Assembly: GCF_963676685.1 (NCBI RefSeq)
Contig: NC_092346.1
Location: 34,410,001 to 34,474,000, forward strand
Direction: 5' to 3'
DNA from: Mytilus edulis
Taxonomy: Eukaryota
DNA: 64,000 nucleotides
The translations under genes were made by a program, and so were the position numbers. The notes under the pieces were generated by a model, which saw only the letters and a program-made list of their open reading frames with translations, did not search any database and was not told the origin of the DNA. Of the stretch, positions 14,621-59,406 are shown piece by piece. Position 1 is the stretch's first letter. The number at the start of each line of letters is the position of its first letter.

Positions 14621-17600
14621 ATGGTGATCATGGCTGTTATAGTGTTTTTATTTTCTGCTTTATTTGTAACTGGTAAGTCTAAAACATCTTAAAACGTATT
14701 TCAAAACACATTAATATTATTTTAGGAGGAATTTCAAAAAACTACCGATCGAGACAGCCGAGATGCAGTGTGCAAATAATTACTTTTCTGTACGTATACC
14801 TTTTTTCGCGGGTAATTATTATCGCGATTTTATAATTATTGCCTTTCAGTTGAAATGTTTGATTTAGATTCGCGTGTATCTATTTTCGCGATAAAAAAAA
14901 AAACAATCGCGAAATTCGTGAAAATGAACACACCGCGAATATAAGTACAATATGTTTGTCTGTGTTAGGATTATTGCACTGATTTTGTAAAACATAAATA
15001 AATAAGGTGATGTGGTATGATTGCCAATGAGACAACTATCCCACAGAGTTCAAATGACCTGGATACATGTATAAGCAATTATAGGTCACCTTCAGCGATG
15101 AGAAAAAACTTAGCTGTTGTAAAAGGCTTTGTTACATGTAACTCTTTCACAACTGGTCCCCTTGTTCGGGGTCTGTTTTGCGTCGTTGTTCTCCTCGAAT
15201 AGTTAATGCGTTTCCTCAGTTTTAGTTCGTAAGCCGAATTTATTTTTTTCTTTCGATTTATGAGTTTTGAACAGCGGTATACTACTGTTGCCTTTATTTG
15301 GCTTTAAAAATTTTAAGTGTGAGGTTTTCACAAACAATGATTTATACCTGTAACACATTAAATCATTAAACAGAAAGTTATTTTAGATAATTTATATTTT
15401 GGATAATACTTCACATTGATTCACGTGATTTATTAAGGACATTACACGACCAAAATGTCCTAACGTTTTGATTTTTTGCTGCATCGTTGAGTACTTTTTC
15501 TCGTTAGTTCCGAATAGAATTCATCAACCACCTTTGTGGAGAACGAATGTGTTAGAATGACAACTAGACGGGTGACTACACGAAAAAACAAGCATTCGGA
15601 AACATTATAAGAAGCATTATTACTTGGGTCACATAACTCGTTCTTTTTCTGATGTAAGCACAGTGAAAAATAGTTATTGATGAGTTCAGAACTATAGAAC
15701 TCCTTTAGCAAGGAATTGCATATCTTTGAATGTGGACAAATGACGAGCCGATGAAACACTTTTTATATTAAGATAAAAAAAAATAAGACATGCAATACAG
15801 GCTCGACTTGTACGAAATGAGTGATTGTGTGATGAGAAATTGGTGATGAATAAATTGAATGCATGTTACTTTTCTTGTTTTCCTTTAGTTCCTTTATTTA
15901 TTTTATCGAGTTACTTCTATTTCATTCCTCTATTAGAATGATAGACATCTGAGAAACGGATTATTTAAAAGTTGTTTACAGTTCCAACTAAAAAAAAGAA
16001 CAAGTCCTCTGCAATTTTAAATTGAAGAGGATCTTGTGTTTTCTTTACCTATAGAACAAAGGGATGATGGTTTTCCTAGCAGGCAGATGACATGAGCTTT
16101 TAATTTATTACGTTTGTTAAACTTAACCTGTTTTAACCTTTAACCGTTCTTCAATTTTCAGCTGAATGTTTCATCAGGGTTAATAATTACGAAAATTCTG
16201 TATACATAGCCAAAGGTCCCGCACAGGGTTTCCAGACGGCACCTCCATCTTTCTATTTTGAACCAAAGGATTATGATTTATTTACCGCCGAAGATGACCA
16301 GGAAAGAACTGTAGTTGGTGATGAAGTCAAGAAAGGTATTGTAGTCATTCCCAGTTCTTGAGCAACCATATAACTTCAAGTGGGATTATGGTTTTTTTAG
16401 TCCGAGTCAGAAAATCGTTTTCTTTAAAATTTAACACTACAACGTATGGGAAAATCTAGATTCAGAATACTTTTTTGTCATCTGCCTTGACAACAATATA
16501 TCACACAAGGTTTATCTTAGTTAGCAAAATATCTTCCCTCACCTTTTTTTAGTTAAAAAATAATAAGAAAAAAAACACACCTCCTTTTTTTAAATTAAAT
16601 TGACGGTAATAACATTAACGATACCAATTTTCCTGCACCATATGCGCATTTCGACAATACATGTCTCTTCAGTGATGCTCGTGGCCAAAATATTTGAAAT
16701 CCAAAGCGCAAATAAAAGATGAAGAGCTATAATCCAGAAGGTTCAAAAAGTATAGCCAAATCCGTGAAAGGAATCAGAGCTTTGCATGAGGGAGATACAT
16801 TCCTTAATTTATAATAATTTCTAATATTTTGTAACAGCAAATTTTAATAACACAAAAACTCCGTATATTCATGCCAGTACCGAAGTACTGGTTACTGGGC
16901 TAGTGATTCCCTCGGGAACTAACAGTCCACCAGCAGAGGCATCGACCCAGTGGTAGTAATAACATTTAGTTAATAATGGTACCAATTTTCTGCACCAGAT
17001 CCGCATTTCGACAACACATGTCTCTTCAGTGATGCTCGTGGCCAAAATATTTGAAATCCAAAGCTTATATAAAAGATGAAGAGCTATAATCAAAAAGGTC
17101 AAAAAGTATAGCCAAATCCGTGAAAGGAATCAGAGCTTTGCATGAGGAAGATACATTCCTTAATTTATAATAATTTCTAATATTTTGTAACAGCAAATTT
17201 TAATAACACAAAAAATTCGTATTTTCATGCCAGTACCGAAGTACTTGCTACTGGGCTGGTTATACCCTCGGGGACTAACAGTCCACCAGCAGAGTCATCG
17301 ACCCAGTGGTAGTAATAACATTAACGGTACCAATTTTCCTGCACAAGATGCGCATTTCGGCAATACATATCTCTTCAGCGATGCTCGTGGCCAAAATATT
17401 TGAAATCCAAAGCTTATATAAAAGATGAAGAGCTATTATCCAAAAACCCTTTTATTAGTTAAACTTTAACAATGTATATTTCAGGTCATTTGGTCACATT
17501 TTACAAGTACAACACAGATTTTTATCCTATTGCCGTACTTGCATTTTTGTTTACTGACAATACTGTAAGTTTTTCTTAAAGCTGTTTTAGAATATAATCC

Positions 17601-18373
17601 AATCTAGGTATTATTTTCAAAAGTATGCACTAAACCATTGTTAATGATTTTAAAAAGCGTTCTTAATAAAGTTAACTAATGGCGCGACGTTAATATTTTC
17701 ATTTTTAACATTGCAATTACCATATGGTTCTTTACTGTATTAAGACGAATGTTCGAAATTAGGCAAGCGAAACCCATGTCATCCGAGTTTGAATTTATAT
17801 GAGTTACAACCTGTCCTAGCTAACCTAGTATTTCCTCACTAATGGGCAATGTGAAAAAAATGAAGAAGATGTGAAAAAAAATGAAGAAGACTTTTAGGCT
17901 ATTCACACCATTAGTCAAAGACAAGAGTGCACGCGTTAATATGTCTCGCCTTCTTTACTAATGATTGATATTATGTTGATAGTCCTAAATATAAAGCTTT
18001 ATTACAACTCTCACATAAACTTTACATTAACCAAGAGAACTAATTTAAACATTGACCAATGAACCATGAAAATGAGGTCAGATGATCCATGCCATACAGG
18101 CATGTCATCTAACAATGCTTCCATACAATAAAATCACCGAAGTTCCTCTTGCTAGAGAAAAAAACATCCAAACTGTAATTATGATTTAGTCATTGTACTT
18201 TTATACATGACCATAATTTACACTTAATTGAGCATAATTGTATATACATGGATGTGCAAGAATGTTAGTCTTTAAAGTTTATAATTTTCACACCAAGACT
18301 CATTTCTAATTATTAAATATATTCTATGTTTCAGTATTTCAATATAATACGAAGAACGTTGCTGCAGGTCTAG
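14621..18373 (+). CDS. Small secreted protein of an unrecognised family, paralogue 1 (114 aa); 4 exons
   Basis: Exons 14621-14672, 16162-16335, 17485-17564, 18335-18373; GT-AG introns, phases 1,1,0. Protein MVIMAVIVFLFSALFVTAECFIRVNNYENSVYIAKGPAQGFQTAPPSFYFEPKDYDLFTAEDDQERTVVGDEVKKGHLVTFYKYNTDFYPIAVLAFLFTDNTYFNIIRRTLLQV*. AATAAA at 18421. Homologous to paralogues 2 and 3. Alternative start at 14630. Confidence 0.8.
16635..16678 (-). ncRNA. Minimal type I hammerhead ribozyme
   Basis: Stem I GCAUCA/UGGUGC, core CUGAAGA, stem II GACA/UGUC, GAAA, palindromic UGCGCA, cleavage after AUA. Confidence 0.8.
16992..17035 (-). ncRNA. Minimal type I hammerhead ribozyme (stem III palindrome variant UGCGGA)
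   Basis: Same core, stem I and stem II as 16635-16678; cleavage after AUC. Confidence 0.7.
17341..17384 (-). ncRNA. Degenerate type I hammerhead ribozyme
   Basis: CUGAAGA and GAAA are intact; mismatches in stems I and II. Confidence 0.55.
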
Positions 18374-18873: not shown

Positions 18874-21142
18874 TAATTTATCTTCTATTTGTTAACATAA
18901 AAAATATATGGATATAAAGAATGATGGAATTTGTAATAAAAAAAATGTGAATATATAAACGTTATGTAGATATAGGAAGATGTGGTGTGAGTGCCAATGA
19001 GACAAGTTTCCATCCAAATAACAATTTTAAAAAAGTAAACCGTTATAGGTCAATGTACGGCCTTCAACATGGAGCCTTGGCTCACACCGAACAACAAGCT
19101 ACAAATGTATAAAGGGTCCCAAAATTACTAGTGTAAAACCATTCAAACGGGAAAACCAACGGTCTAATCTATATAAAATTAAAAAAACAACGAGAAACGA
19201 GAAACACGTATAAATTACATAAACAAACGACAACTACTGTACATCAGATTCCTGACTTAGGACAGGTGCAAACATTTGCAGCGGGATTAAACGCTTTAAT
19301 GGATCCAAACTTTCTCCCTTTTTCTGAAACAATAGCATAACATCACAACATAGAAAAACACATGAAAAAATATCAATTGGCAGACTTAACTCCATCAAAA
19401 AAAACGTACATTAATACACTATAAACGAATAAATTTGATCTGCGATATCTGAATGCAAATGCACAGTTAATAAAATATTAGGGACAAACATTCAAGGCCA
19501 AATAGCAAACAAACAAGTCCAAACAGTAGGCATGTAAACGCAACCAATAACAATAATAGTGTCATTCGGCAATCCTCGGTAGAATCCGCTACTCTCGTTA
19601 GATGAGGGTACTGAATCGGCCGAGGTGAGACGAATGTAATAGTGTGTCCTATGTATATGTATAATTTAAAGTAGTTGATCATGGTTTTCGGAACATACAC
19701 TTAGTTTAAATAATTGTTTTATTAATTTTGTTCGTCAGGCTAATTTCGTTCATACCGAATACAAACTGTGATTTGCCCTGTATGACCAGACAAGGATATC
19801 AAATAAGTCTAACGTAAAAAGACAAGGTATGTCAGACCAGGAAACGGAAAACCTCTGTGTGTTGATATATCCGTTTCAGTAAACAATAAGTTAAGGAGGG
19901 AACTTTACTGAGTAACTTTAAATATATCGATAAACAAGTCCACTGTAATAAACTAACATTAATCGTTTAGCAATTTATATTTCACAACATTTGATACTGT
20001 TTGCGTACATGTTTTCGTTATTCGGTTGTTTTTCTTCCTATTTTTCTTTTTCTTTGATTGTTGTTGTTTTTTGTTTTTTTGTTTTGCTTTTTTTAATTTT
20101 TATCTCAAATGCTTTAATTTTGAAATTTAAAAGGTAATTTAGATTCTCCGATAACAATGCCAATGTTAGGTATGAAAATTATCTTAAACGGCGAACACAT
20201 TTGATATATAATTAAGAAGTTATCACGGTACTTTTCATTGAAAGTGGGCCAAATTCTTAACATTTGACTGAATCACTTTATCACATGTTAATTTCAAAAT
20301 CAATGACTCCACATCCAAATTAAAAATAAAGTACCAAAAAAAAATGTCAATTGATAATAAAATACATATCATGATTGAAAATTTCATGACAAGGTGTTCA
20401 TTAAGACCAAAATGAGTCCAGAAATTCGTAAATAACAATGACGAGATAGACACAGTCATACAGAATGTGGCGGTATTAAGCTAGTTGGAAGGCCCGACAA
20501 CCATCCCCAAATCTGGAAAAGTCCTCATAAAAACAAACTATGAAAATTATTTGAAAAGGGATTAACTCATCAGATGTATACAAAGCAGAAATACTTTTAA
20601 CAAATTTAAAACAGAGTGAACGAGGCAGGGTACTTATACGCCCCAACAACAAAACGACACTAAGTACATGTCTAGGAGTTCTTGCAGTTACTGACAGCTA
20701 GCTCAAAACAAAAACAACGTATAAAAAAATCAGGCATCTAAGACGAAAATATCAAGCAGGTACACATACAACATACTGGATTTATCGTAAAGACGGTGTT
20801 ACCTGAATTTGAAAGGGAAATGAAAGATAAATGCCCATAAACTCGGCAATAAAATGTGAAAATATGTTTGAAATATTCAACCATACATACTTTTTTTTTT
20901 TTCACATCAGACATTCCGCTTCTTCCCAAATGATTATTTTGATATGAAGAAAGCGTTTTCCTATCAATTCTCAATAAAGTCAGACTGTCAGAACTTGCCC
21001 AAATATCAAAGATGATATTGTTTGCTGGTGTTGCGTTTCATTTGATATTCAGTGTAAACTTACAAGTTATTGAAAATGCACTTAATATTGTGTTTATGAA
21101 TATAAAACTCATCATAGCATAAATCGACTTCGTCAATTCAAG

Positions 21143-24100
21143 ATGATCATACTAGTGTCCCTTTTTGTTTTATGCAGTTTTGGAATAGGTAAGTAATACA
21201 ACAACATACAAATGTAATGTATTATTCTTATTTTTAATATGATTATAATATATCAACCTTTCATATTTTGTTAAGTGCATCGATTAAACTAGATATTTAA
21301 AAGACTTGTTTTGGCATATATAATTAATGTCTGGTATCAGATTTGAATCAAATCCTTATCAAAATAAAGTGCTTCATTAGATTTTTTTCCGAATTTATAG
21401 GTCATAGCTTTTATTTTGACGAAAGATACCACCGAGACAGTCAAATTCAAAAATCGAAAATAAGCTGATAGCGCCATGGCTAAAAATGAAAAGACAAACA
21501 GACAACATTACACATGACACGAAAGAAAACCAAAGTTAGCAACACGAGCCCCACTAAAAACTAGGGGTGGTCACAGGTGCTCCGGAAAGGTAAGCAGATC
21601 TTGCTCCACATGTGGCACCCGTCTAAATGTAGCCAACAGAATCATTCACCGTATAAATAATATATATATTAGTGCACAGCAACCTATTTTGGAAAAAAAA
21701 TCTTCTTAAATCAGTTTTAAAAGTAACTTTACATAGTTTACTCAAAGTTTTATTCTTTTGAAAGTCCTTGACGAGTCCTTGCCTTGCTTTCAGTGTATAT
21801 ATAAGAGTCCAGGTATGGTCTAAAAGGGAATGGGAAATATTTGTATATAGAAGAAACAGGTTTATCGCTCGTCGATGAGATTGTAGCTAAGAAACACTCA
21901 CTCTTTCGAAAAAAAATATCGATAATCTATCAATATTGTTTCATTCAATCCATAGCTTGTTGTAAGATGTGAAGGCCGTGCTTTGACCTATTATGGTTTA
22001 CTTTTATAAATTGTTACTTTGGTGGAGAGTTGTCTCATTGGCACTCATACCACATATTCCTATATATATGTAGTTAAAAAACTTGTCCTTGATATATGAA
22101 ACAAGAATCGAAAGGCTGAAAAAAATTAAAGTATATCTATGAAAGAGAAAATTTTAGGCTATTACATGTAGGATATATATAATCATTTTCATAACAGCGA
22201 GGACAATACCATTTCTTTGAGCGCCAAGGTTATAAATAAAATTGGCCAGCTAATAAGCTGAACGTTTTTTTCGGTAACGCCAACTTGTCATAAGCTATAC
22301 GTGATATAGACATTTAAACTGGGGTTTGTCAAAGGTTCTAAACGCTTAAATCGAATAATATGAATAACTACCAAATAACTTAACCTTGTGTATTGATGTA
22401 AATGTTGAATACTTAAAACACTTTCTTCTCTAGCACCTGAATATACTTTTTACTCTTTTATTCTATGAAAATTCCCATTGCGGAAGTCCTGAAGTGGGCA
22501 TACAATCACTGTAATCGATATTCATGCACTGATAAACGATTTAAAGAAAAATGTTCCGTTTTATAACCAACAAGTATATCTGTTGTCCACGCCGTTATCA
22601 AAATTATATTATGAACTCAAGGTGGATGAACTACAATTCTAATGCAATTATGTTGTAACAATTGTTCTGATTGGATGACAGCAAGCGTAATCTAAATTTG
22701 CGACAGTAAAACTACCGATGGACGTCCTTAAAGCTTCAAATACAATACAGTTATCTCTTAATTCATAATTTTCTTTCATTTGTAACTATGATCTATTAGG
22801 ATTAGAAATGTCGTTTTTCCTTGGACTAAAATATATAGAGCAAATGCCTGGTGGTGCACAATGCGGGATAAGTACATGTACTACATTGTACAAAACATTT
22901 ATATAAAAGTATAATGTTTAACTATTTAAATTCGATTTCAGTTGACTGTTACGTCAAGGTAGAAAATTACCAAGATTCTGTTTACATCAAAAAAGGATAT
23001 TCCAGCAATCGTAGATTTTACCCAGCATCAAATATAACTGTTTTTGAACCGAGAAACTACGATTTTATGTCAGATGTAATTTGGAGTAGCGTTGATGGTG
23101 TTAACAAGAAAGGTGATTTTTTATTTTATTTTTTTTAATATCTATTATTTACTTCAATAGTTAAGGTCCTAGGATAGAGTGCTCGTCCTTTGATTTTCAT
23201 AGTCATGCACTAGCTATATAGTGTGGACAGTGTTTAACGAGAGACATGTAATACAATATGTCTCTGGTATAACTTATACATATTATTCATACAGCTTCCA
23301 TGTGTATTGATATTTTATGCATGGAATATTATATGTACATGTGAGATGTAAGTAAAGGATGAAATAAAATGTTTAACATATTCAAAGTGATGCCAAATCT
23401 TTATGTAAAGTAGTGATTTGTTCCATTTAAATGGTCAGAAAGTTGTATGTTTGAAGTTGTGAATGTACAACTGAATTATAGACAGAATTGCCCATATTAT
23501 GATATTATACTATTTGTCCCAAAATAGTTCACTTCACTGTAGAAATCGTTTTGAGATACAAATGTACATGCATAGCAGACCTTTGAGAAACATGTTGAAA
23601 AGAATTGCTCTTTTTAATTTAAATTGTCGTTCTAAAGTTTAAAAAAAATCATTTTACATATATTTTTCAGGACATTTAATGAGGTTCTTCAATCACATGT
23701 ACGATAGCAAAAATCTAGTTCCGATTTTACAATACTATTTTACAAATGATGAGGTATGTTACTGGATTAGGAGTGTTAGTCGTATAAACAATAGACGACA
23801 AAATATACTGTTCCATTTTGTTAATAAATTGATAAATCGTACTATTTTTTAAAAATATAATGAAAGGTACATAAATCAACAAACCGCGGGTTCCAAACCA
23901 AAGGTTTTACAAAACTTACTAATTTAGGAATAATTATACATAGAAAAAGGCATTATTATGTGAATAGAAAGAATTTGGGATTAAAATATGAGAAGAAAGC
24001 TTTTATAAAATCTTATTATAAAAAAAAATAATCAAAGTACTGAAGTACTGAAATCTGATGACTGCAAGTTCTTGTGGATGGACCGACAAACACTTGTCTC

Positions 24101-24396
24101 AAAAGAAAAATCACATCTCTATACCTGAAAGTGAGGTTATATACAGATATAATAAAGACATGAAAGTATTACTTGTGTCGGAAAGGAAGTGTTGCGTTTT
24201 TTTATGTTGCTCAATCTAAATGTACAACTTTTTTTGTGTCTCTCATTATCACAGTCATGCACAATGTTTCCAAACGCAATTTTCTTGTTATTACCATATA
24301 AAATTACTCATTTTCTAATTTCAGTATTACCAGAATATATCAAAAACTATTATTGAAGAGATGACTTACCGTCCAGTCTTTCACGTGAAGCTGTAA
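21143..24396 (+). CDS. Small secreted protein of an unrecognised family, paralogue 2 (123 aa); 4 exons
   Basis: Exons 21143-21188, 22942-23112, 23671-23753, 24325-24396; GT-AG, phases 1,1,0. Protein MIILVSLFVLCSFGIVDCYVKVENYQDSVYIKKGYSSNRRFYPASNITVFEPRNYDFMSDVIWSSVDGVNKKGHLMRFFNHMYDSKNLVPILQYYFTNDEYYQNISKTIIEEMTYRPVFHVKL*. TATAAAA at 21101. Confidence 0.87.
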
Positions 24397-25110
24397 ATGT
24401 TTTAGATTGTCGACTGTAACATTAAAAAAATAGTGTTCATTCATTTTAATGTTTTCAGTTGTTTTTTGTTGTTGTTTTTTTTAGTTTTATTTTATCTACC
24501 TAGTAACTTTCTGTTAATTTTTCAATAAAACAAATTGATTCGGTATTATCTAACAAGAAACCAAGGTAATATTGTTTGGATCTGTAGCCCAAATGCAGAT
24601 ATTCTAAATTATAATAAATCTTCAAATCACCTCTTTAGGACAGCAACCTCTGATATTTTTTTGTAATCAGGGTTGTGGCTATCTCTTCGAAAATCCAGTC
24701 TATCCGTTACTCTTTTATATTAAATAGTATTATCAAAAGTGACATCATTTTCATCCAATCAGAGGACAGATCGTCAAGAACGCCAAAGCCGTTACAATCA
24801 TTCAGGTCAAAGGTTTATCAAATCGAAACTAACCCAGAATGCATCGAAAAATTGAAAACGGGACTCTTTAGACTAGTTTAAAGCTAGAAACATTCATTGC
24901 CAACATTAATTGCACAATTTGTCTAAACCGGGCGACCATCAACTTACAATATACACTGTACGAACGTCATTTTTAGTCGAGCGTTTGGTTTTGACAGGTT
25001 TTTCTTAAGTTAATAGCATTCATACTTGAAAAATAATATGACATATATACAACCTTTATATTTATAATCGTTATGGTATTACATATACAGTATATTATAC
25101 ATGTATATGT

Positions 25111-26083: not shown

Positions 26084-26085
26084 AT

Positions 26086-39121: not shown

Positions 39122-39651
39122 TATAATGTTGTGAGCACTTCATATAATGTTGTGATCACTTCATATAATGTTGTGATCACTTCATATAATGTTGTGACCA
39201 CTGCATATACTGTTTTGACCACTTCATATAACGCTTTGACCACTGCATATAATGTTGGGAGCACTTAATATAATGTTGTGAGCACATAATATAATGTTGT
39301 GAGCACTTAATATAATGTTGTGAGCACTTAATATAATGATGTGAGCACTGCATATAATGGTGTGAGCACTTAATATAATGTTGTGAGCCCTTAATATAAT
39401 GTTGTGAGCACTTAATATAATGGTGTGAGCACTGCATATAATGTTGTGAGCACTTAATATAATGTTGTGAGCACTTAATATAATGGTGTGAGCACTGCAT
39501 ATAATGGTGTGAGCACTTAATATAATGTTGTGAGCACTTAATATAATGGTGTGAGCACTGCATATAATGGTGTGAGCACTTAATATAATGTTGTGAGCAC
39601 TTAATATAATGTTGTGAGCACTTAATATAATGGTGTGAGCACTGCAAATAA
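39122..39651 (-). repeat. Same 21-bp tandem repeat, inverted, about 25 units, right arm
   Basis: Read directly from the sequence. Confidence 0.9.
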
Positions 39652-47910: not shown

Positions 47911-50900
47911 ATGTTGAAGATCGTGATGTTGTTTGCTTTCCTTTTTGTCTATCATGGTAAGTTCAAAAATTGAAAATATCGAATTAGTTCCTTTTTTTCT
48001 TAATTTGTAATAGCTATGTAATTAAAATCGTGAATTGTTATATATTTACATTTTCGTTTAAATCACATTTATCTGCATACTTGATTTAGCTTAATGTTGG
48101 TTGGTCAATTTAATATTTTATGATATTTTAATTGATCTGTCTTTTCTTAATCATACGAAACAATGACTCGTTTTAATTATAATTCTTATATACTTTACTT
48201 AGCACTCTGTATATATACGTTTTTAAGAACATTTTGTCTACGAATACATAACATATATCAACACCAAATATTTAATTATGTTATTGTTGATTAAAACTAT
48301 GGCTGCTACATACATGTTATTATAGACTATTTTTTAAATAACCGACTTTCTAGATAAACAATACTATAGCTAGTAGTTTGCTAAACACACCTCTGTTGAT
48401 CCGGAAGGGTCAATAATCTTATGGTATTGTTATTTAATAAATACCAAAAGTTTGCAGGTCAACATTACATTACAGTTATTATCAAATTTGACAAATACAT
48501 AAGTTTGGACACGTAATGTTATAAGTACAGACCAGTATATTGTAACGCCGCCTCCTCTTCTATAATTATTATCTCCTCGGAATTGCTGATCATTTTGATT
48601 TTTGATAATAAGTACTTCACTCGTCAAAGATTCAATACTTTGTTTGATTTCATTTATTTCCCGTTTCAGATCAGGCTCTTGAACGGTTTTAATATCGACA
48701 ATGCGAACATTTCGACCTTTCCGTATATCGGCAACTCGTAATGCTTCGAGTCTAACAGCAATATTTTCTGCCTCATTTATTGATTTTGGTCCAACCTCCC
48801 TTACTCTGAGACGTACTTCTGTTTCAATTATTGCATCAATAAAAGAATCTAAAGCTAATGTGTCCCTAACCAGTGGAGAGGTACCAGGATAAGCCCTACG
48901 TGTCAGTTTCTTAATAGCCTGGGCTAAATCAGGCAGACTTTCATTGTTAAATCGTACTCGTGTTTGCAACTCTGCTCTAAACACTTCAGCTCTATTGACT
49001 GAACCAAACCTATTCTTAAGAGACGTGACCAAACTGTCAAAATCGTGACGATCGACTTCCGTGATTTCATTTAGAATTGCTCCTGCTCCGCCGGACAAAC
49101 TACTAGCCAATAACAAAGCTTTTGTTTTTGAGTTCCAATTGTGCAATTCTGCTAACATTATTTGTAAACATGGATCGATCTTTATCAATAAAGATGGGTT
49201 TTTACTTTAAATTTATTAGTTGATCATAAGAACAGTTTTATTTGAGTTTAGAGTATAATAAGGTAACTACCGCGAAAATACGGAATCAGTACGTGAAATA
49301 AAACTTCTTAACAAACTAACATACACAAATCTGTCGTATCATGGAAACAACAGCCAAAATAGCAAATTAAAAGTCTTACATTATTTGCAACATTAAACAT
49401 CTCAGTAACAACTATCGTTTATTCTCAATAATTTCAAGAAACTATACAGACATAGGTTTAAATATAAAAAGGGTGAATGCCATCATTACAATATCTAGAA
49501 ATTAAAACGGATCCATTCACCCAGATGGCAGTATGGAGCTCACGATCTATCATCAAAAAATTTAATATGCAGTTTTCAAGGTCGTGTGCTCAACAACCTT
49601 CTTTGTAAAGTTCTTGTCTGCTCTCTGGTCGGATTGTTGTCTCTTTGACACATTCCCCATTTCCATCCTCAATTTTACTTGATGAGCCCTTGTCTTTTTA
49701 TGCACATAAGCATGGTTAAAATCTGAATATCAAGTCCAGACATAAAGATAAGAATATCAAATTGTCTTCTTCATTTACGAAATATGGCCACAAAGAAAGA
49801 AGGAGGTGTGGGTACAACTACGTACATCCCCCTATTTGGTCCTACACATGATCCACACTTGAGTTGTTTGAAAGTATTTAGTATAACAAAAGTATTTTCA
49901 ATCAAATTTCATTTTAGTTGACTGTTTTGTCAAGGTTGAAAACTACCAGAATTCGGTTTATATACAAAGAGGTTTCTCCAGAGGGTATAGTTTCGAAAAA
50001 GCACCAGATACAACCGTTTTTGAACCAAGAGGCTATGATTTGATGTCTGATAAGAGTTTTTTCTGGGTTGAAAGTGTAAACAAGAAAGGTAAGATTATAA
50101 ATTAAATATCATAATTATGTATAATTCACCTTACAAGCTTAATTTAAAATTGTCAAAAAGAAATTTAATCCCTAAAAAAAGAAACAAATAAAGAAACAAA
50201 TAAGACCGCAAACCTTTGTGAAATAACGCTAACCATTGCGCTATTTTTACAAAACTAACGCAAACATTTGAATTTCATTTATTCGATAAGTTTTGTATAA
50301 ATGTAATTTATTGCAAATTTAGTGTCTCGAGTCTTTGAAGGCAGGGTATTGATCTTTTTGTGTATTGAACTTGTATATTTATTTGTATGATTAATATGTG
50401 ACACTTTAATCAAATAATCAGTAACCACTATCATTATTATCATATAATTTATGTCTTTCTGTCATTAAAATATGATTGTGATTAAGTTCAGAGAAGAACC
50501 ATAAATACAAGACCAAATGATTAATAATAGATATGCAAAGGAATAGAAAAGATATCAGAATGTATAGTTATCAAAGGTACCAGCATTATAGAATGAAATT
50601 CAAAACAGTGTGGCTGTGGCCATTGATTGACACATTAAATTCATCCATTGACTGGGACAATTTACGTGAACGTTTGTCTGTAACGACCACTGTTCACGAC
50701 GTACCTACGATAGACATTTAAACTGTGGGGTCACCAAAGATTTCTTAACGCCTTTAATTATAAAATAATTCGAAAAAATAATCAGGAATAACCTTTATGT
50801 TTTGATTTATATAATTGATATAAATCAAAACATCATGTTATTTCTGATTAATTTTTTCGAATTACTTTATTGAGGTGTTTAGAACCTTTGGTGACCCCAT

Positions 50901-53900
50901 AGTTTAAGTGTGTTTAAAAAGTACATAGTGAGCAGTGGTCGTTACATACAAACGTTCACCTAAATTGTCCCAGTCAATGGATGAATTTAATGTGTCAATC
51001 AATGGCCCCAGCCACACTGTTTTGAATTTCATTCTAATTTGGTACGCCATACGCGCGTTTCGTCTACACAAGACTCATCAGGGACGCTCGTATCAAAATA
51101 TCAATAAAGCCAACCAAGTACAAAGTTGAAGAGCATTGAGGATCCAAAATTCCAAAAAGTTGTTCCAAACATATGATAAAGTCATGGAATTGTCATTTCA
51201 ATCTAATGACGTAACTTTTGCTTTGGTAGCAATTTCAGAGGAGATAACATAATTATAATAAAAAAGCATCTTCATTTTATACACTTTTGGATCCAACCAA
51301 CCATACACAATGCTCAAACGAGAGCTAATTATTACATTTGGAGTATTAGAATTTTTTTCTAAAGAAAAAAGAAAAGTAAGTGAAAATAAAATAGAAGTTC
51401 CCCAATCCATAGTAAAAAAAAAAGAAAAAAAACCCACTAGACACTATGGTTTGTTTAATTAATATATATGAATTTTTGCTAGGCATTCGAGGGGGGAAAT
51501 ACAGGTTGAAAAAAATGTTTTTACTTAACATTGTGGACCTATTGATCGATGATGTCCGTTTCAGAATCTAAAGAATCATGGGCAATTTCAATGTTCGAAC
51601 CCCAAGCAAAATAAAAAAAGAAAGAAATAAGTCATTCTTTGGTTGAAGTTCAGAATCTATTTTTTATGACATTTTTAACCAATCACGACGTTTCGGTGTA
51701 TATTTTTGAAAATATTACCCAGGATGCATTAGATTCTGAAACGAGAAATTTGTTTATATTTTTCAGGTCATTTAGTACAATTCTACAAATATCAACCAGA
51801 GACTATGGCGCAACATCCGGTTTTGCGTTACTATTTCACAAATGATGAGGTAAATACCCAATTTTTCAAGTGAAATTCAAAACGGAAAGTCCCTTATAAC
51901 ATGTCAAAATCAAAATCTCAAACACATCAAACGAATGTAAAACAATCCTGTCATATTCCTTACTTGATACATACATTTCCTTAAATGAAAATGGAGAATT
52001 AAATCTGGTTTAATAGCTAGCTAAACCTCTCAGTATTCTATTAAACAAAACAAAAAAGAAATTACTTCTGGATACCAAAAATAAAATAAAAATATGTAGT
52101 GTTTAGATAAACGTCTGCTCTTTAGTATGTTTGTTTTCTCTTCCACAAATTCCCGATTTCCATTATCAATTTAATAAAAGATGAAGTTAGTGTTATTTTC
52201 CAAAAATATTACTAGGTATAAGTACCAGATCATGGTTTAAAGTCCTAGAAGATTTTACAAAAACCAAAAAAAATAAACCCCCCAAAAAAACCCAAAAAGC
52301 ACGTTTTTTTTCAAAAATTGTATATTGAATAAGCATTATTATATGCCTAGAAAGACAACACTTTAAAATGATAAAATTTTGAATAAGATATCAGAAATAG
52401 ATTTTAAAGAATCATACAGTTCTAATGATAACAAGTCTAACAATTAAAGCAATAACGTTATTGCATAAAATCACTTAGGCAAACTTCCTATTTCATATCT
52501 CGGCCTTTATTTTTTAAATCCTAAATTGTTTACATACAATACACATTTTTACACAGCATTACATCTTGTGCAGTCTTTAGTTCTCTGTGGGTTTTTTTCT
52601 GTCCTGCATGATGTTCGTCTGCCTTTTATTTTTTTTTTATTTTTTATTATTAACCATTGCGTTGTCAGTTTATTTCGACTAATGATTTTGAAATATAAAA
52701 AATGTGGTATGGTTGTCATCGAGACAACTCTCTACAAGAGACCAAATGACATAGAAATACTACAGATTACCGTACGGCCTTCAACAATAAGCAAGTCCAT
52801 TTGGAATGATACGCCTCTCTTTGATTTGTGTGCCCTTTGTTTTCTAATACTGAACTCAGAGGAAAATTCAAAATGAAAAGTCCCTAATCCAATGGCAAAA
52901 TCAAAAAATAAAACACATCAAACAAATGGACAACAACTGTCAATACCTGACTTTGTACAGGCATTTTCTTGTGCAGAAAATGGTGGTTTAACCTGGTTTT
53001 ATAGCTAAATCTTTCACCTGTATGACAGTGGCATCAAATTCCGTTATATGATTAAATGGGTATAATTGTCAAAATATGGGTACCGCAGTCAACTTTACAG
53101 AAAGTATCAATATGATTCAAAACTGTGATGGAGATGATTTTAAGAACCGATATTTTGCAATTAAGGATTCATGGACATCGGGAATCAAAAACAAAAATAT
53201 TTCTGAATAAGAAATATAATATGTCTTGAAACGAAATACTGCCTACTGAGTAGTAGTTGGTTTTCTTTGCAAAAAGACAGCTATAAAAATAAAAAAATCT
53301 TAGAAAAAGTTTCGATTCCATAGTATTTTTACGTAACTATATACTTGTAAGAAAAGAGAAAATATTGGGACAAAAGATTGAGTGATTAATCATTTAGTGC
53401 TGGTTGATTGACGTCCAGTGGCAAATATTTCATGAATGTTCAAGACGCGAACAAATAAATAAAAACAAGAGAGGTTCTGTATCAAAGGCAGTCGATGACG
53501 TTCACTTTATGAAAATCAAAAGAGTCAAAACCTAGAAAAGTAAAGTATTGGGTACCCCCTGTAGTTGCTCTGTATACAAAAGTCAAGTACAGTGGAGATC
53601 ACTTCTAACTTCTCATTAAATCTGTCAGAATCTGTCATGAGAACTGTTCTAGGACAGTACGTAGAACTGTCAGCCTGACACCTTTTAGTCAGTTCTAGCT
53701 AGAACAGTTCTAACCTAGAACTGATTTGGTCAGTTCTACCTAGAACTGATTTGGACAGTTCTACCTAGAACTGATCCTGACAGTTCTACCCTAGAACAGT
53801 TTTAGACAGTTCTAGCTAGAACTGACCAAATCTTTGGTCAGTTCTACTTCTAGAACAGTTCTACGGTTAGAATTGATTTCAAATTCTACGGCTAGAATTG

Positions 53901-56900
53901 ATTTATAAATTCTACGGCCAGAATTGATTTATAAATTCTACGGCTAAAATTAACTTATAAATTCTACGGCTAGAATTGATTTATAGGTTTTAAGAAATTT
54001 TTGTCTAAATATAAAGGCTTCGGCAAAATAGCGATTAATATTATATAGAGTTTTGCTATTTTGCCGGTTTTATTTCAGATTTATAATCGGCAAGAGAACA
54101 TGTTTAACCCCGCCATATTCTGCATGTATGTGCCTGTTCCAAGTCAGGAGCCCGTAATTCAGTGATATTCTTTTGTTAATGTGTTACATAAATTATTTGT
54201 TTTTCTTTCATTTTTTGTACATAAATTAGGCTGTTAGTATTAGGGGGGGGGATTATTATTTGAATTGTTTTACATTTGTTATTCCGGGAGTCAGGATGGC
54301 TCGTTATCACATAACAAAATTATCTGACCTCATTAACCAAATGCAATATCTGTTTACGAGTAGTTTTCATACCTTGGACCAAGGATTTTTATAGTAAGAC
54401 TATACAAATCCTTGCTCGGACGGACCTGTTTAACAAAAATCTTTTGACCACATCAATCTAAAATGACATTATTTGCTCTTTCTTTCTGCAAATCTATATA
54501 GCTGCACAGTACTTCAGTTTTAATTTTAGGTCAAGAGGGACGTACTGTACTATACAAGTTACAGCCATATTGGAAAACAATTTTGTTCGCACCAATTTAT
54601 AGTGCCAGCATGCAGGGGCAGATCCAGCCATTTTAAAAAGGGGGAGGGGGTTCCAATCATGAGTAAAGGGGGGTTCCAACTATATGCTCCCATTCAAATG
54701 CATTGATCGGCAAAAAAAGGGGGTTCCAACTCCTGGACCCCCACTTGATCCGCCAATGAGCATGTCCTCTTTTTATTCAAAATATTGAATCATAAACAAA
54801 TATTAGTAGTTTTCATACTTCAGACTGAGTCGTGTAATAAAATCTTTTGACCGCATCAACCAAAACGTACCATATTTGCTCTTTTTTTATGTAAATCTAA
54901 ATAGCTGCACAGTAATTCAGTTATAATTTTAGGTCAAGAGGGACTGTAGTATATAAATAACTATAATATTGGAAATCAATGACCACATTTTTTTCTCTGG
55001 CATCAATTGAGAGTGCCAGCATTTCCTATTTTTATTCAAAATATCGCATCAGAAACAAATATCAGTAGTTTTCATACCTCAGACTGACTCATGTAACAAA
55101 ATTATTTGTCTGCATCAATCAAAACTGACCATATTTGACAGCATCAACCAAAACTGACCATATTTGACCGCATCAACCAAAACTGACCATATCTGCTCTT
55201 TTTTTTATGTAATTCTTATAGTCGCATAGTAAATCTGTAATATTTTTATGTAAGGATGGATTGTAAAATCATGAAAATACAAATGATAGAAATATTGGAC
55301 CACAATGCTACCTAATTTCATTTGCATCAATTTAGAATGCCAGCATGTCCTCTTTTTATTCAAAATATTGCATCATAAACAAATATCAGTAGTTTTCATA
55401 CCTCAGACTGACTGGTATAACAAAATAATTTGTCCGCATCAACCAAAACTGACCATATTTGCACTTTATTATGTACATGATGTCAATCTTAATAGCCGCA
55501 AAGTAAAACGCTTATATTTTTATACCAGGATGGATTGTTTAATATAAATGAAAGCAATATTGGAAAACGAAATTCTGCTCACATCAGTTTATAGTGCCAG
55601 CATGTCCTCTTTTTAATCAAAATTTTGAATCGTAAACTAATTTCAGGACATGTAGTTTTGATATCTCAGACTGACTCATGAATATAACAAAATTATTTGT
55701 CCGCATCAACCAAAACTGACCATATTTACACTTTGTTGTGTAAATCTTAATATATATATAGCCGCATACTAAATCACTTATAGTAATACATATTACAATG
55801 AATTGTATAATTCAAATGACAGCAATATCAATGAATATTGGAACAAAAACATTTCCACATCAATTTAGAGAACCAGCAAGTCCTCTTTTTATTCAAAATA
55901 TTGAATTGTAAACAAATTTCAGTAGTTTCGATATAAGACTGAGTCCATACCTGCAACCAACTTTTCAAAATGCCCATAGGGGTTTTATGTGCAAGAGGAC
56001 TCTTGTGATCCCAAATTACCTTCAAGGGGGCCTTTAATGCACTTTAATGTTGTTTGTAGGCTTCTTCATACTTTTGACAGCTTGTAGCATTTTTAAAACT
56101 AACTGTTTTGGTTAAGATTGTGGACAAAATTGCTCTTTCAAAATTTTCATTTGGGAGCTTTCATTGGGGAAATCCCCCGCAAATAATGACAGTGTGAGTC
56201 GTTTTAACAAAATTATTTGACCGCATCAACCAAAACTCAACTTATTTACACTTTATCATGTAAATATATATAGCCTCATTGTAAACCAATAATATTTCTA
56301 TGTGAGGACGGATCGTATGATAAAAATGACACCAACTTTGAAACACAATACACAATATCACTAATCCTGGCTGACCCGGCCTCTTGAACTTTTGAAGCAT
56401 GCAACAATCACTTTTCCATTGTGGCGTCAGATATTTTGTTTTAAGACGTCAAAATTTTACGGGAACCTGTGTGATATCCAGTAATGACAGACAAATAGCG
56501 ACAAGGTGTATTTATACCATATCTAAGAATCTAACGTGCCGTTAATTCCTCTCTGTATCCATAATAATGAACGGTCACTAAAGTGACTTTTTAACATGTT
56601 TAAATTAAGTCAGTAGTTTGTGATGTTGTTTTTTGTCGAGCCTGCAACTTTTGTTGCAGAAAGCTCGACATAGGGATAGTGATCCGGCGGCGGCGGCGGT
56701 GGCTACGGCGGCGACGTTAGCTCACTTCTTAAAAGCTTTATATTTTAGAAGGTGGAAGACCTGGATGCTTCATACTTTGTATATAGATGCTTCATGTTAC
56801 GAAGTTTCCGTCAGTCACATGTCCAATGTCCTTGACCTCATTTTCATGGTTCAGTGTCCACTTGAAAAAAAAGTTCAAATTTTTTGTAATGTTGAATTCT

Positions 56901-59406
56901 CTCTTATTATAAGTAATAGGATAACTATATTTTATATGTGCGTACCTTGCAAGGTCCTCGTGTCTGTCAGACAGTTTTCACTTGACCTCGACCTCATTTC
57001 ATGGATCAGTGAACAAGGTTAAGTTTTGGTGGTCAAGTCCATATCTCAGATACTATAAGCAATAGGGCTAGTATATTCGGTGTATGGAAGGACTGTAAGG
57101 TGTACATGTCCAACTGGCAGGTGTCATCTGACCTTGACCTCATTTTCATGGTTCAGTGGTTATAGTTAAATTTTTGTGTTTTGGTCTGTTTTTCTCATAC
57201 CATATGCAATAGGTCTACTATATTTGTTGTATGGAATGATTGTTAAGTGTACATGTCTAGCAGGCAGATGTCATGTGACCTTGAACTCATTTTCATGGTT
57301 CAGTGGTCAAAGTTAAGTGTTTGAGTTTTGGTCTTTTTATCTAATGCTATATGCCATAGGTCAACTATATTTGGTGTATGGAAATATTTTATGATCTTTA
57401 TGTCAGTCCAGCACGTTTTATTTAACCGTGACCTCATTTTCACGGTTCATTGCACAGTGTTAAGTTTTTGTGTTTTGGTCTATTTTTCTTAAACTATAAG
57501 TAATGTGTCAACTATATATGTTGTATAGAAACATTCTTAGCTGTACCTGTCTGCCTGGCATGGTTCATCTGACCTGGACCTCTTTTTCAAGGTTCATTGG
57601 TCTTTGTTTAGTTATCTTGGTTAATGTTAAGTTTATGTGACAGTTGTAATAAAGCTTATATTTTACCTTTATACTTAGGACTATCAACATAATATCAATG
57701 ATTAGTATAGAAGGCGAGACATTTCAGCGTGTGCACTCTTGTTTTTAAACAAAACTATTTAAAGGCATCATCCAACACTCACATGACTGATTCTAATACT
57801 TTATTTTAAAAATAAAATGAAAAGTACATGTATGGGAAGTTCTCTTCTTGGAATAGTATACTGTTAATATAATTTGAAGAAGGCAAAGAAAAATGCATGA
57901 TTTTGTTTGTAGCCGAACATCCAGGGGCAAATGTTTCATTCATGTTCAGATCGAGTATATTTTATTGAGTTTCTGACTCCCAGCTATCATTTATAATCGT
58001 TATGGATAAGTCTGGCTGAATTGACGAGATGGTGCAAATGTATATATAAATTTTTTACGTTATACAACGCTTTTTTCATTATTATCCCATAATTCATCCA
58101 CTGTACAATTTTCGTTTGAACATTTGTCAAAACAGAATCTTAAATGAATGTAAATCCAAGGCAAACAAGGTAAATTACGATTAAAATTCCATGAACTGAT
58201 GAATTAAATGCAGAGTTATATTTAGGAAGAGACTGTTAAAAACGAGGAACGAAGAAACGTAAACAATGATGTTTCCGTATGCAATCTTATAAAAAAATTC
58301 TCCGATGAGTTGGATAACCTTCTATTCACTTCGATATTTGTACATGTAACGTTTGATCAGTAAAAAATATAGAAAATCTTCTATTATATAGCAAAGTAAT
58401 TGGAAGTGATTTATTTCTTCTAAATTCTAAAGTGCTCTTACTGCATTTAGAACTGTTCTACAGTCCCGACTGATTTAGTTAGTTCTGCTGACAGTTCTAC
58501 GGTTACAAGTGATTTTGACAGTTCTACCTAGAACTGAGTTAGACAGTTGTACCCTAGAACTGATCCTGACAGTTCTACCTAGAACTGATTTAGTCAGTTC
58601 TATCTAGAACTGATTCTGACAGTTCTATCTAGAACTGATTCTGACAGTTCTAGGTAGAACTGTTCTAGGACAGGTTAGAACAGTTCTATGACAGACTATT
58701 CTGACAGTTCTAATGAGAGGTTAGAAGTGATCTCCACTGTATAACGTAAAACGTGCCTTTTTATTTTGGTGTCACACCACCAATTACTCCCTCAAATTTA
58801 GAACGTATGTGAAAGTAGGCCTACTCGGACAAAAAATAGTGTATTTGATGTCATTGTTTACTTAAACTACCCAACAAATTTGCAGAAATGAAACTTTTGG
58901 GGAAAGAGAAATATATTAAGACCATTTTCAGCCCAAATTTACTTGTCTATGAGTCGACATTAAAAACTGAGGATTAATGCGCTCCATAGTATACTAATTT
59001 AAGATTTCAAGAAAACCAGGGGTTATTTTTAGTGGTACATCCATTCGGAAGGTCTCTTTTTTCTTATATGGCTTTAAAGGTCTGTTGAAAATTGGCATGA
59101 AGAAATGTGATACCTGTACGATTCAGGACATACATGTTTTATAAGAGGTTAAACTTAAGATAAAAAATATAGAAAGCTATGAAAATTGCAAAATTTGGTT
59201 GAACAGATAGGGACTTTTAATTGGTGGTCTGACACCTTTTTGTCTACCTTTGTCCCAATTTTGTAAAATTTCATGTTTACTCATTTTGTTTTGATGTTTT
59301 TTTTTTGTTACTATTTATTACATTATAATTTCAGTATTACCAGAATATATCAAAGACAATAATTGAAGAGATGACTGCCAATCCTGACCTTTGCGTGAAG
59401 CAGTAA
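47911..59406 (+). CDS. Small secreted protein of an unrecognised family, paralogue 3 (123 aa); 4 exons with TE-expanded introns
   Basis: Exons 47911-47956, 49918-50088, 51767-51849, 59335-59406; lengths 46/171/83/72 nt, identical to paralogue 2. Protein MLKIVMLFAFLFVYHVDCFVKVENYQNSVYIQRGFSRGYSFEKAPDTTVFEPRGYDLMSDKSFFWVESVNKKGHLVQFYKYQPETMAQHPVLRYYFTNDEYYQNISKTIIEEMTANPDLCVKQ*. Confidence 0.85.
48545..49160 (-). mobile_element. Ty3/Gypsy gag (capsid) fragment in intron 1 of paralogue 3
   Basis: NW...KALLLASSLSGGA...LKNRFG...FRAELQTRVR..NESLPDLAQAIKKLTRRAYP...LALDSFIDAI...GPKSINEA is a typical retrotransposon gag pattern. No LTR or pol seen. Confidence 0.75.
50591..51034. mobile_element. Palindromic MITE with TA TSD, inserted into a retrozyme copy
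   Basis: TA|GAATGAAATTCAAAACAGTGTGGC...GCCACACTGTTTTGAATTTCATTC|TA. The flanks rejoin to the repeat seen uninterrupted at about 37365-37490. Confidence 0.8.
51044..51087 (-). ncRNA. Minimal type I hammerhead ribozyme, second family
   Basis: GCGUCC-CUGAUGA-GUCU(ugugu)AGAC-GAAA-CGCGCG-UA-UGGCGU. Degenerate relatives at about 37397-37441 (-) and about 34691-34734 (+). Confidence 0.65.
54360..56340 (+). repeat. Diverged tandem repeat with 260-320 bp units (about 6 copies), interrupted by two small MITEs
   Basis: Recurrent TAGTTTTCATACCTCAGACTGA...CATCAACCAAAACTGACCATATTT...GCCAGCATGTCCTCTTTTTATTCAAAA. A MITE at about 54613-54758 is flanked by an AGCATG duplication. Confidence 0.7.
56628..57745 (+). 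mobile_element. Helentron-associated non-autonomous element (pearl/DTC84-type) with GGC microsatellite and about 150-bp satellite units
   Basis: T-rich start TTTTTGTCGAGCC, (GGC)n, repeated TGACCTTGACCTCATTTTCATGGTTCA units, end AGGCGAGAC...GCACTCTTGTTT. Confidence 0.65.

What the first reader, a model, noticed from the sequence alone, without database searches (positions are those of the whole stretch)
14621..59406. Unrecognised three-member family of small secreted proteins with a conserved scaffold and three variable segments
Seen in sequence: three + strand genes, largely missed by the ORF track, share a 4-exon structure (phases 1,1,0; paralogues 2 and 3 have identical exon lengths) and a signal peptide ending VDC/AEC. 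Conserved blocks (V.NY..SVYI..G; FEP..YD; KKGHL..F; FT; and in paralogues 2/3 an identical YYQNISKTIIEEMT with only synonymous differences) alternate with three divergent segments: YSSNRRFYPASNI/FSRGYSFEKAPDT/PAQGFQTAPPSF, VIWSSVDG/KSFFWVES/AEDDQERTVVGDE, and NHMYDSKNLV/KYQPETMAQH/KYNTDFYPIA. Paralogues 2 and 3 share 64 of 108 residues after exon 1 by my manual count. The mature proteins are aromatic-rich and essentially Cys-free, unlike the Cys-rich mussel antimicrobial peptides. Inference: a lineage-restricted binding or effector scaffold with diversifying loops (immune recognition, gamete recognition or matrix). I do not recognise the family.
Basis: partly seen in the sequence, partly recalled or inferred. 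Interest (0 to 1): 0.82.

Follow-up and report, generated by a model that had tools for sequence, protein, structure and literature searches.

The report
Mussel-only secreted PH-like protein family
Three neighbouring mussel genes are real, spliced and (at least one) strongly expressed; they belong to a family of at least seven genes, named so far only from Mytilus, that encodes small secreted cysteine-poor proteins predicted to fold like a pleckstrin-homology (PH) domain with variable loops, and whose job is still unknown.

Summary
Three + strand, 4-exon genes (phases 1,1,0; all GT-AG) sit at 14621-18373, 21143-24396 and 47911-59406. Their joined translations equal three RefSeq Mytilus edulis "uncharacterized proteins". 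RNA-derived contigs show two of the three splice junctions of the middle gene, with exon depth about 10^4 against near-zero intron depth.

Two points need correcting:
- The genes are already annotated.
- The family has at least 7 loci in this genome: six in about 135 kb on one chromosome and one on another.

A profile search of 1.84 billion proteins found 9 family hits. All named ones are Mytilus; two unnamed ones are a marine metatranscriptome protein and a short ENA fragment. Pfam and PDB sequence searches gave nothing.

AlphaFold models of two paralogues (pLDDT 82 and 86) show seven strands plus a C-terminal helix. The structural neighbours are almost all PH-superfold domains, but only at Z 5-7, so this is fold likeness, not membership.

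They are much less conserved family-wide and between species. dN/dS there is about 1 or lower, against 0.11-0.16 in the scaffold, so loops are relaxed or fast-evolving and positive selection is not shown.

Function is unknown. An extracellular binding module is my best guess. This scan has reported other Mytilus-only secreted families, but not this one.

The parts
14621..14672 (+). P1 exon 1: start codon and hydrophobic signal-like segment; ends in phase 1 before GTAAGT
   Evidence: equals the start of P0004
16162..16335 (+). P1 exon 2: end of the signal region (A-E-C), strands b1-b5, variable segments V1 and V2, ends in K-K-G (phase 1)
17485..17564 (+). P1 exon 3: G-H-L block, V3, F-T block; ends in phase 0
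18335..18373 (+). P1 exon 4: short C-terminal helix (12 codons) and stop; AATAAA at 18421
21143..21188 (+). P2 exon 1: start codon and signal-like segment
   Evidence: GT..AG joint 21186/8 to 22940/2 in RNA-derived contigs of run X2
22942..23112 (+). P2 exon 2
   Evidence: exon depth up to 36148 in X3 against about 0-100 in non-repeat intron bins
23671..23753 (+). P2 exon 3
   Evidence: joint 23751/3 to 24323/5 in X1, X3 and X2
24325..24396 (+). P2 exon 4 with stop; ATTAAA at 24421, and depth falls after about 24425
47911..47956 (+). P3 exon 1: start codon and signal-like segment
   Evidence: equals P0006
49918..50088 (+). P3 exon 2
51767..51849 (+). P3 exon 3
59335..59406 (+). P3 exon 4 with stop, after a 7.5-kb intron
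   Evidence: the model equals RefSeq protein P0006

Best explanation
Shown:
- The three genes are functional members of a tandemly duplicated family. It has at least 7 loci in Mytilus edulis, and each clade has orthologues in at least two Mytilus species.
- Each gene encodes a protein of 108-126 residues: an N-terminal hydrophobic signal-like segment followed by one compact domain of about 90-105 residues.
- The middle gene (P2) is spliced as modelled and is very abundant in some RNA samples.
- The scaffold is under purifying selection.

Predicted:
- The domain is a seven-stranded beta-sandwich closed by a C-terminal helix, that is, a PH-like superfold.
- The conserved blocks form the strands, two tight turns (N-Y-x-x-S and E-P-x-x-Y-D), the K-K-G-H start of strand 6 and the helix.

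Inferred (my best guess at mechanism):
- After signal-peptide cleavage the protein is released as a stand-alone extracellular binding module.
- As in other PH-superfold domains, a ligand would be held by loops at the ends of the sandwich.
- Tandem duplication plus fast loop evolution would give paralogues with different specificities or charges (mature pI 4.9 to 8.8 in M. edulis).
- The ligand and the physiological setting (mucosal or humoral defence, matrix, or other) are not known.
For: Gene reality:
- Canonical splice sites and intact frames.
- The models equal RefSeq proteins.
- GT..AG joints e1-e2 and e3-e4 of P2 appear in contigs of three runs, with depths 123 (e1-e2, X2) and 60, 1052 and 8323 (e3-e4, X2/X1/X3). 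Exon bins reach about 10^4 in X3.
- 14 presumed RNA runs from 7 studies and two species labels hold an mRNA-sized share of the words.
- No intronless copy was found in the genome.

Selection:
- Scaffold dN/dS is 0.16 for P2/P3 and 0.11 for P5/P5b.

Family extent:
-. Tree of the clades.

Fold:
- AF2 gives pLDDT 82.1 / pTM 0.73 for P2 and 86.2 / 0.75 for P1, with the same strand order.
- The VIA-align top-50 lists are almost wholly PH, PTB, FERM-F3, GLUE, EVH1 and Tfb1 domains. Best hit: 2p0d_A, Z 6.8, rmsd 3.1 over 87 residues.
- The top Foldseek hits are also PH domains.

Variable segments:
- Mean BLOSUM pair score is 0.46 in the segments against 2.95 elsewhere, p 1e-9. 61% of loop residues lie in the segments against 27% of strand and 0% of helix residues.
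- 14 of 21 sites that differ among three species' P2 lie in the 31 segment residues, p 8e-5.

Secretion:
- All 14 aligned members start with an uncharged hydrophobic stretch of about 14-20 residues. It is modelled as a separate low-confidence helix.
Against: - No structural match reaches Z 8, a level the tool says can reflect only a common arrangement.
- The alignments behind the models are shallow (14-16 sequences).
- No signal-peptide predictor was available, so secretion is inferred.
- dN/dS in the loops does not exceed 1, so specificity-driven diversification is not demonstrated.
- V2 and V3 lie at opposite ends of strand 6, so there is no single variable face.
- No ligand, tissue or condition is known.
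- One raw RNA run of the second species label (X21) had no exon reads at all.
- PH-superfold domains are, to my knowledge, typically intracellular.
Confidence: 0.55

Rival explanations
1. A bulk structural or matrix component (byssus, shell matrix, mucus or extrapallial fluid). The compact aromatic-rich domain is a building block, and the variable loops are simply unconstrained surface.
For: - Very high transcript depth in one sample.
- 18-19% aromatic residues, 8-12 Tyr per mature chain.
- Loop dN/dS is about 1 or lower, as expected for unconstrained surface.
Against: - The proteins are predicted to be well folded rather than repetitive or disordered.
- pI ranges from 4.9 to 8.8 among M. edulis paralogues, unlike the uniformly basic foot proteins.
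- There are no repeats and no Gly/Ser/Asp bias.
Confidence: 0.2
2. An immune effector or recognition family. The PH-like sandwich binds microbial lipids or glycans, and the paralogue repertoire is shaped by host-pathogen conflict.
For: - Tandem expansion, and fast divergence between very close species (P2 is only 89% identical between M. edulis and M. galloprovincialis).
- Divergence is concentrated in the loops.
- Mytilus is known for lineage-restricted secreted defence families, for example MgCRP-I and the myticalins (abstracts).
- A cGAS-like (Mab-21) gene lies between P2 and P3.
Against: - No dN/dS above 1 was found.
- There are no infection-response data.
- There is no likeness to any known antimicrobial family.
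- Gene neighbourhood has little weight in animal genomes.
Confidence: 0.2
3. A carrier of a small hydrophobic molecule or lipid (pheromone, sterol or pigment), held between the two sheets and the helix.
For: - A small secreted beta-sandwich with a capping helix and an aromatic-rich core.
- A few non-PH neighbours at Z about 5 are putative ligand or haem binders: 3fm2_B and 3na2_A.
Against: PH-like sandwiches have a closed hydrophobic core without a cavity (my own knowledge). The model could not be inspected for a pocket.
Confidence: 0.05

Closest known systems
PH-domain superfold (PH, PTB, FERM-F3, GLUE, EVH1, Tfb1/p62 PH-like domains)
   Same: Predicted seven antiparallel strands in two sheets, closed by a C-terminal helix. 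Size is about 100 residues. Sequence variability is concentrated in inter-strand loops, including the b3-b4 and b6-b7 loops that border the ligand site in classical PH domains.
   Different: No sequence-profile match. Z is only 5-7. The family has an N-terminal signal-like segment and stands alone, whereas PH modules sit in intracellular multidomain proteins. The helix lacks the Trp that is typical of PH domains in 13 of 14 members. The b1-b2 turn is conserved and not basic. P1 and the chromosome-2 member are acidic.
Mytilus lineage-restricted secreted multigene families (MgCRP-I, PMC4558851; myticalins, PMC5577615)
   Same: Confined to Mytilus, multi-exon genes with a signal-peptide exon, several paralogues, and conserved parts alternating with highly variable parts (abstracts).
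   Different: Those families are short cysteine-knotted or linear cationic peptides cut from pre-pro precursors. This family is a folded domain of about 100 residues with 0-1 Cys, no pro-region and no dibasic processing site.
Bacterial PH-like domains (Pfam bPH_7, EbsA)
   Same: They appeared among language-model feature neighbours of P2 (score 0.91), in line with the fold prediction.
   Different: The scores are in the range that shuffled proteins reach 4-10 times in 100. The second query (P1) gave no usable hit. There is no alignment or E-value, so this is a lead only.

Membership tests
PH domain / PH-like clan | Seven-stranded beta-sandwich capped by a C-terminal alpha-helix | tested here: met
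   This rests on AF2 models of P2 and P1 only. Neighbour lists are dominated by PH-superfold chains, best Z 6.8 and 5.8.
PH domain / PH-like clan | Significant match to a Pfam or PDB sequence profile of the clan | tested here: not met
   Pfam: no hit for exon pieces and no meaningful hit for 14 full members. PDB profile search: nothing below E 0.8.
PH domain / PH-like clan | Conserved Trp in the C-terminal helix (own knowledge of the family) | tested here: not met
   In alignment A2 the helix columns carry Y/F/I/L. Only P0017 has a Trp there.
PH domain / PH-like clan | Basic phosphoinositide-binding motif in b1-b2 (only a subset of PH domains has it) | tested here: not met
   The b1-b2 turn is the conserved N-Y-x-[DN]-S block. 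Mature pI is 4.9 in P1 and the chromosome-2 member.
PH domain / PH-like clan | Structural match strong enough to argue homology (Z of 8 or more, standing clear of the background) | tested here: not met
   No chain reaches Z 8 in three VIA-align runs. Foldseek gives no E at or below 0.001.
Cysteine-rich mussel defence peptides (defensins, mytilins, myticins, mytimycins, big defensins, MgCRP-I) | Conserved array of 6-12 cysteines in a short mature peptide | tested here: not met
   0-1 Cys in mature chains of 90-107 residues.
Mussel foot (adhesive) proteins | Repetitive, disordered, strongly basic, Tyr/Lys/Gly-rich sequence (own knowledge) | tested here: not met
   Tyr is 7-11%, but there are no repeats, the predicted fold is confident (pLDDT 82-86) and pI ranges 4.9-8.8 in M. 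edulis.
Secreted protein (classical signal peptide) | Cleavable N-terminal signal peptide | tested here: inconclusive
   A hydrophobic uncharged stretch of 14-20 residues after Met occurs in all full-length members. It is too short for a typical membrane span and is modelled apart from the domain. No signal-peptide predictor or N-terminal proteomics was available. The cleavage site is unresolved, so it is unclear whether the Cys of V-D-C / A-E-C stays on the mature chain.

The most novel reading that the evidence does not exclude
This would be, as far as I know, the first animal family of stand-alone, secreted PH-superfold proteins. It would have arisen within the mussel lineage and would work as an extracellular recognition or effector scaffold whose loop repertoire is diversified by tandem duplication.
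Probability: 0.2. Interest if true: 0.7.

Novelty: new variant of a known kind. Interest (0 to 1): 0.45.

Why it matters
Mussels are known for many lineage-restricted secreted gene families, but most described ones are small cysteine-rich or linear peptides. This family is a folded, nearly cysteine-free domain of about 100 residues with no detectable sequence relatives, and it is predicted to reuse a fold known mainly from intracellular signalling domains. If the fold and secretion are confirmed, it offers three things:
- A compact natural scaffold with defined variable loops.
- A case study of how a new extracellular family arises and expands.
- An abundant, easily assayed marker transcript.

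Practically, it gives seven "uncharacterized protein" entries a common family definition, a conserved gene structure and a testable structural hypothesis.

Tried and rejected
Searches that gave nothing:
- Pfam on all exon pieces and on 14 full members.
- PDB sequence profile searches; the best hits, at E about 1, are chance.
- ESM Atlas. P2 gave only bacterial hypothetical or bPH clusters at chance-level scores, and P1 gave no usable hit.
- Papers by accession numbers and LOC ids: 0 papers. Topic searches gave only general context.
- Rfam at gathering threshold on 14000-60000: no match.

Orthologue CDS, and therefore orthologue dN/dS or site models, could not be obtained.
- Reads were laid on P2. 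Splicing and expression of P1 and P3 were not tested with reads.

Limits of the reads evidence:
- The e2-e3 joint of P2 is not in the listed joints, because 23111-23143 was skipped as a repeat. Contigs X1 record 7 and X2 record 15 run past both exon ends, which is consistent with the junction but not proof.
- Raw RNA run X21 had no exon reads. That could be tissue, condition or gene absence in that animal.

Analyses I discard:
- A partition of P5/P5b drawn after looking at the differences gave loop dN/dS 1.37. It is circular.
- Weak genome hits on contigs C11, C6 and C8 (E 0.1-0.4, some with stops) were treated as chance or decayed copies and not pursued.

Tests that could not be run:
- Whether the three segments share one surface could not be measured, because model coordinates are not given. 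Only a topological argument is offered.

How the spliced models were handled:
- The joined spliced models were never sent to a search or folding tool.
- Exons were searched by reference. The database proteins that these searches returned, which are identical to the joined models, were used instead.
- In scripts the exons were joined only for translation and dN/dS.
Full report
**Source and naming.** The window is G000:C3:34410001-34474000 of a 1.37-Gb genome. The best protein matches are named Mytilus edulis. I call the three genes P1, P2 and P3 in window order.

From the translations and the bases at the boundaries I get these models:

| Gene | Exon 1 | Exon 2 | Exon 3 | Exon 4 |
|---|---|---|---|---|
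| P1 | 14621-14672 | 16162-16335 | 17485-17564 | 18335-18373 |
| P2 | 21143-21188 | 22942-23112 | 23671-23753 | 24325-24396 |
| P3 | 47911-47956 | 49918-50088 | 51767-51849 | 59335-59406 |

- All nine introns are GT..AG with phases 1,1,0.
- P2 and P3 have identical exon lengths (46/171/83/72 nt). P1 has 52/174/80/39 nt.
- Each joined CDS is a multiple of three with one terminal stop.
- The first 14 codons of exon 4 differ by three synonymous changes only.
- Between P2 and P3 only the exons still align at DNA level; the introns do not. The duplication is therefore old, and the conserved exon 4 is not a recent conversion tract.

**2. Are these genes expressed?**

- Exon 2 of P2, and then exon 2 of P1, returned full-length database proteins.
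- A search with the returned P2 protein gave P3.
- P0001, P0004 and P0006 are letter-for-letter the joined translations of P2, P1 and P3.
- They are RefSeq XP_071162424, XP_071162423 and XP_071160551, all "uncharacterized protein [Mytilus edulis]". The genes are therefore already annotated, though nothing is known about them.
- I sent no joined model to any tool. The database proteins served instead.

Reads evidence for P2:
- Fourteen runs guessed to be RNA, from seven studies and two species labels, hold 11-23% of the words of a 3.35-kb stretch around P2. That is about the share the mRNA makes up.
- Laying four runs on 19500-25400 gave GT..AG joints at 21186/8 to 22940/2 (X2, depth 123) and at 23751/3 to 24323/5 (X1 1052, X3 8323, X2 60).
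- Exon bins in X3 have depths of 9,700-36,000, against roughly 0-100 in non-repeat intron bins.
- Depth drops right after an ATTAAA 25 nt past the stop.
- The e2-e3 joint is not listed, because 23111-23143 was skipped as a repeat. Two contigs that overrun both exon ends are consistent with it.
- No intronless copy exists in the genome, so the joined contigs come from mRNA.
- One raw RNA run of the other species label had no exon reads. Expression is therefore not universal, or the gene is absent in that animal.

**3. How big is the family and how far does it reach?**

Within this genome:
- Exon 2 of P2 also hits C3:34559691-34559849 on the minus strand.
- Searches with two further family proteins found loci at C3:34499380-34500436 (-), C3:34520721-34521902 (-) and C2:35782566-35783985 (-).
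- All of them have exons 2-4 broken at the same points: exon 2 ends in K-K-G, exon 3 starts with G-H, exon 4 starts with Y-[YF]. A signal exon was found for three of the four.
- That makes at least seven loci. Six lie within about 135 kb on one chromosome: three on the + strand in the window and three on the - strand downstream. One lies on another chromosome.
- I did not check the locus at C3:34520721-34521902 for intactness, and I found no signal exon for it.

Outside this genome:
- A profile of seven members, searched against 1.84 billion representative proteins, gave ten hits at E below 1e-3. One of them, a 787-residue repetitive protein, is spurious.
- Every named hit is from M. edulis, M. 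galloprovincialis, M. trossulus or M. californianus.
- The two unnamed hits are a Tara-type metatranscriptome protein (P0018, E 1.5e-12) and a 71-residue fragment from a 591-base ENA contig (P0020).
- A maximum-likelihood tree resolves clades P1 to P6, each with at least two species. The paralogues therefore predate the split of these species.

**4. What kind of protein is it?**

Sequence searches gave nothing. Pfam found no hit for the exon pieces and nothing meaningful for 14 full members. PDB sequence profiles found nothing.

Structure prediction:
- AlphaFold2 with the family alignment gave confident models for P2 (pLDDT 82.1, pTM 0.73) and P1 (86.2, 0.75), with the same order of elements.
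- The order is a low-confidence N-terminal helix (the signal-like segment), then seven strands, then a C-terminal helix.
- In P2 numbering the strands are 20-23, 29-33, 42-43, 47-50, 57-64, 73-81 and 88-96, and the helix is 99-114.

Structural neighbours:
- Foldseek found no match at E 0.001 or better, but its top rows are PH, GLUE and Tfb1 domains.
- VIA-align against 48,161 representative chains, and a second look at Foldseek's best 1,000, gave top-50 lists made almost entirely of PH-superfold domains for both models.
- The best hits were Z 6.8 (2p0d_A, rmsd 3.1 over 87 residues) for P2 and Z 5.8 for P1. None reached Z 8.
- I read this as a PH-like topology, not as evidence of common descent.
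- The membership tests that could be run fail: no profile match, no helix Trp in 13 of 14 members, and no basic b1-b2 motif.
- The protein carries a signal-like N-terminus, whereas PH modules are, to my knowledge, intracellular.

Composition:
- Mature chains are 18-19% aromatic in the three window genes (14-19% family-wide), with 0-1 Cys.
- pI runs from 4.9 (P1 and the chromosome-2 member) to 8.8 (P2, P5).
- P2, P3 and P4 share an N-[IV]-S sequon in the helix.

**5. The variable segments.**

I use P2 numbering: V1 = 35-47, V2 = 61-68, V3 = 80-89.
- Across 14 members the mean BLOSUM62 pair score is 0.46 in the segments and 2.95 elsewhere in the domain (Mann-Whitney p 1e-9).
- 61% of loop residues lie in the segments, against 27% of strand residues and no helix residues.
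- V1 is the b2-b3-b4 loop region with a conserved Phe anchor at position 41. V2 is the outer half of b5 plus the start of the b5-b6 loop. V3 is the b6-b7 loop.
- Among the P2 proteins of three species, 14 of 21 differing mature sites fall in these 31 residues (Fisher p 8e-5). V3 was taken as 79-88, one residue off.
- P2 is only 89% identical between M. edulis and M. galloprovincialis. That seems high for such close species; this comparison rests on my own knowledge.

Nei-Gojobori dN/dS estimates:

| Pair | Part | dN | dS | dN/dS |
|---|---|---|---|---|
| P2 vs P3 | Whole mature chain | 0.303 | 0.914 | 0.33 |
| P2 vs P3 | Variable segments | 0.91 | 0.89 | about 1.0 |
| P2 vs P3 | Scaffold | 0.144 | 0.925 | 0.16 |
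| P5 vs P5b | Variable segments | 0.26 | 0.87 | 0.30 |
| P5 vs P5b | Scaffold | 0.040 | 0.376 | 0.11 |

- For the younger pair P5/P5b the segments were mapped through the alignment rather than by eye. Amino-acid differences are still enriched in them (11/30 against 6/64, p 0.003).
- A partition I first drew after seeing the differences gave 1.37. I discard it as circular.
- So the scaffold is clearly constrained, and the loops evolve fast, at or below the neutral rate. Positive selection is neither shown nor excluded.
- V2 precedes and V3 follows the nine-residue strand b6, so they should lie about 25-30 Å apart at opposite ends of the sandwich.
- By strand numbering, part of V1 (b3-b4) and V3 (b6-b7) correspond to two of the three loops that frame the ligand site of classical PH domains (own knowledge). 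The third loop, b1-b2, is here a conserved N-Y-x-x-S turn.

**6. How it most likely works.**

Shown:
- A real, expressed, constrained and tandemly expanded gene family.

Predicted:
- A PH-like sandwich with variable loops.

Inferred:
- The protein is released from the cell after signal-peptide cleavage and acts as a small extracellular binding module.
- Paralogues differ in loop sequence and charge.

I give this reading 0.55. The setting is open between mucosal or humoral defence (0.2 as a specific claim), a structural or matrix role (0.2) and a small-ligand carrier (0.05). The cGAS-like (Mab-21) gene between P2 and P3 and the reported poly-Glu gene upstream are neighbours only and carry little weight.

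**7. Novelty and verdict.**

- The genes are annotated but uncharacterised. No paper in the library mentions their accessions.
- This scan has already met several other Mytilus-only secreted families on other DNA, so the general phenomenon is common in this genome. This particular family was not among the notes returned.
- What stands out here is a folded, nearly Cys-free domain with a predicted PH-like topology on a secreted protein.
- I rate it a new variant of a known kind, with interest 0.45.

Noticed in passing
window 27660-28775 (- strand): This ORF has Pfam Mab-21 nucleotidyltransferase and Mab-21_C domains (E 1e-5 and 3e-13). It is a cGAS-like receptor gene lying between P2 and P3. The neighbouring 335-aa ORF at 25111-26118 (-) has no Pfam match.
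   Followed up: partly
An Rfam scan of 14000-60000 at gathering threshold found no family match at all. I did not run the more permissive threshold.
   Followed up: partly
window 21470-21666 and 21864-22060 (P2 intron 1): Contig depth is very high (up to 1.7e5), with many loose ends and back-joints in all four runs. This looks like a highly repeated, transcribed element inside the intron.
   Followed up: no
L020 8712-8557 (G000:C3, about 34.5617 Mb, - strand): The RefSeq model of the fourth paralogue (P0015, 162 aa) starts 36 residues upstream of the Met that aligns with the other members and with the 126-aa M. trossulus orthologue. The N-terminal extension is probably an annotation artefact.
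   Followed up: partly
L019 (G000:C3:34520721-34521902, - strand): This seventh family locus is 66-100% identical to P5 by exon, with introns about 75-80% alike. None of the database proteins returned was identified with it. tblastn found no signal exon. Whether it is intact is unknown.
   Followed up: partly
window 24406 (just after the P2 stop): One X3 contig leaves the reference at 24406 with 32 letters that occur nowhere in the window. This could be an allele or an alternative 3' end.
   Followed up: no
window 39177-39644 (- strand): This 155-aa ORF has sub-threshold Pfam matches to a beta-roll repeat family. It is probably low-complexity or repeat sequence.
   Followed up: no
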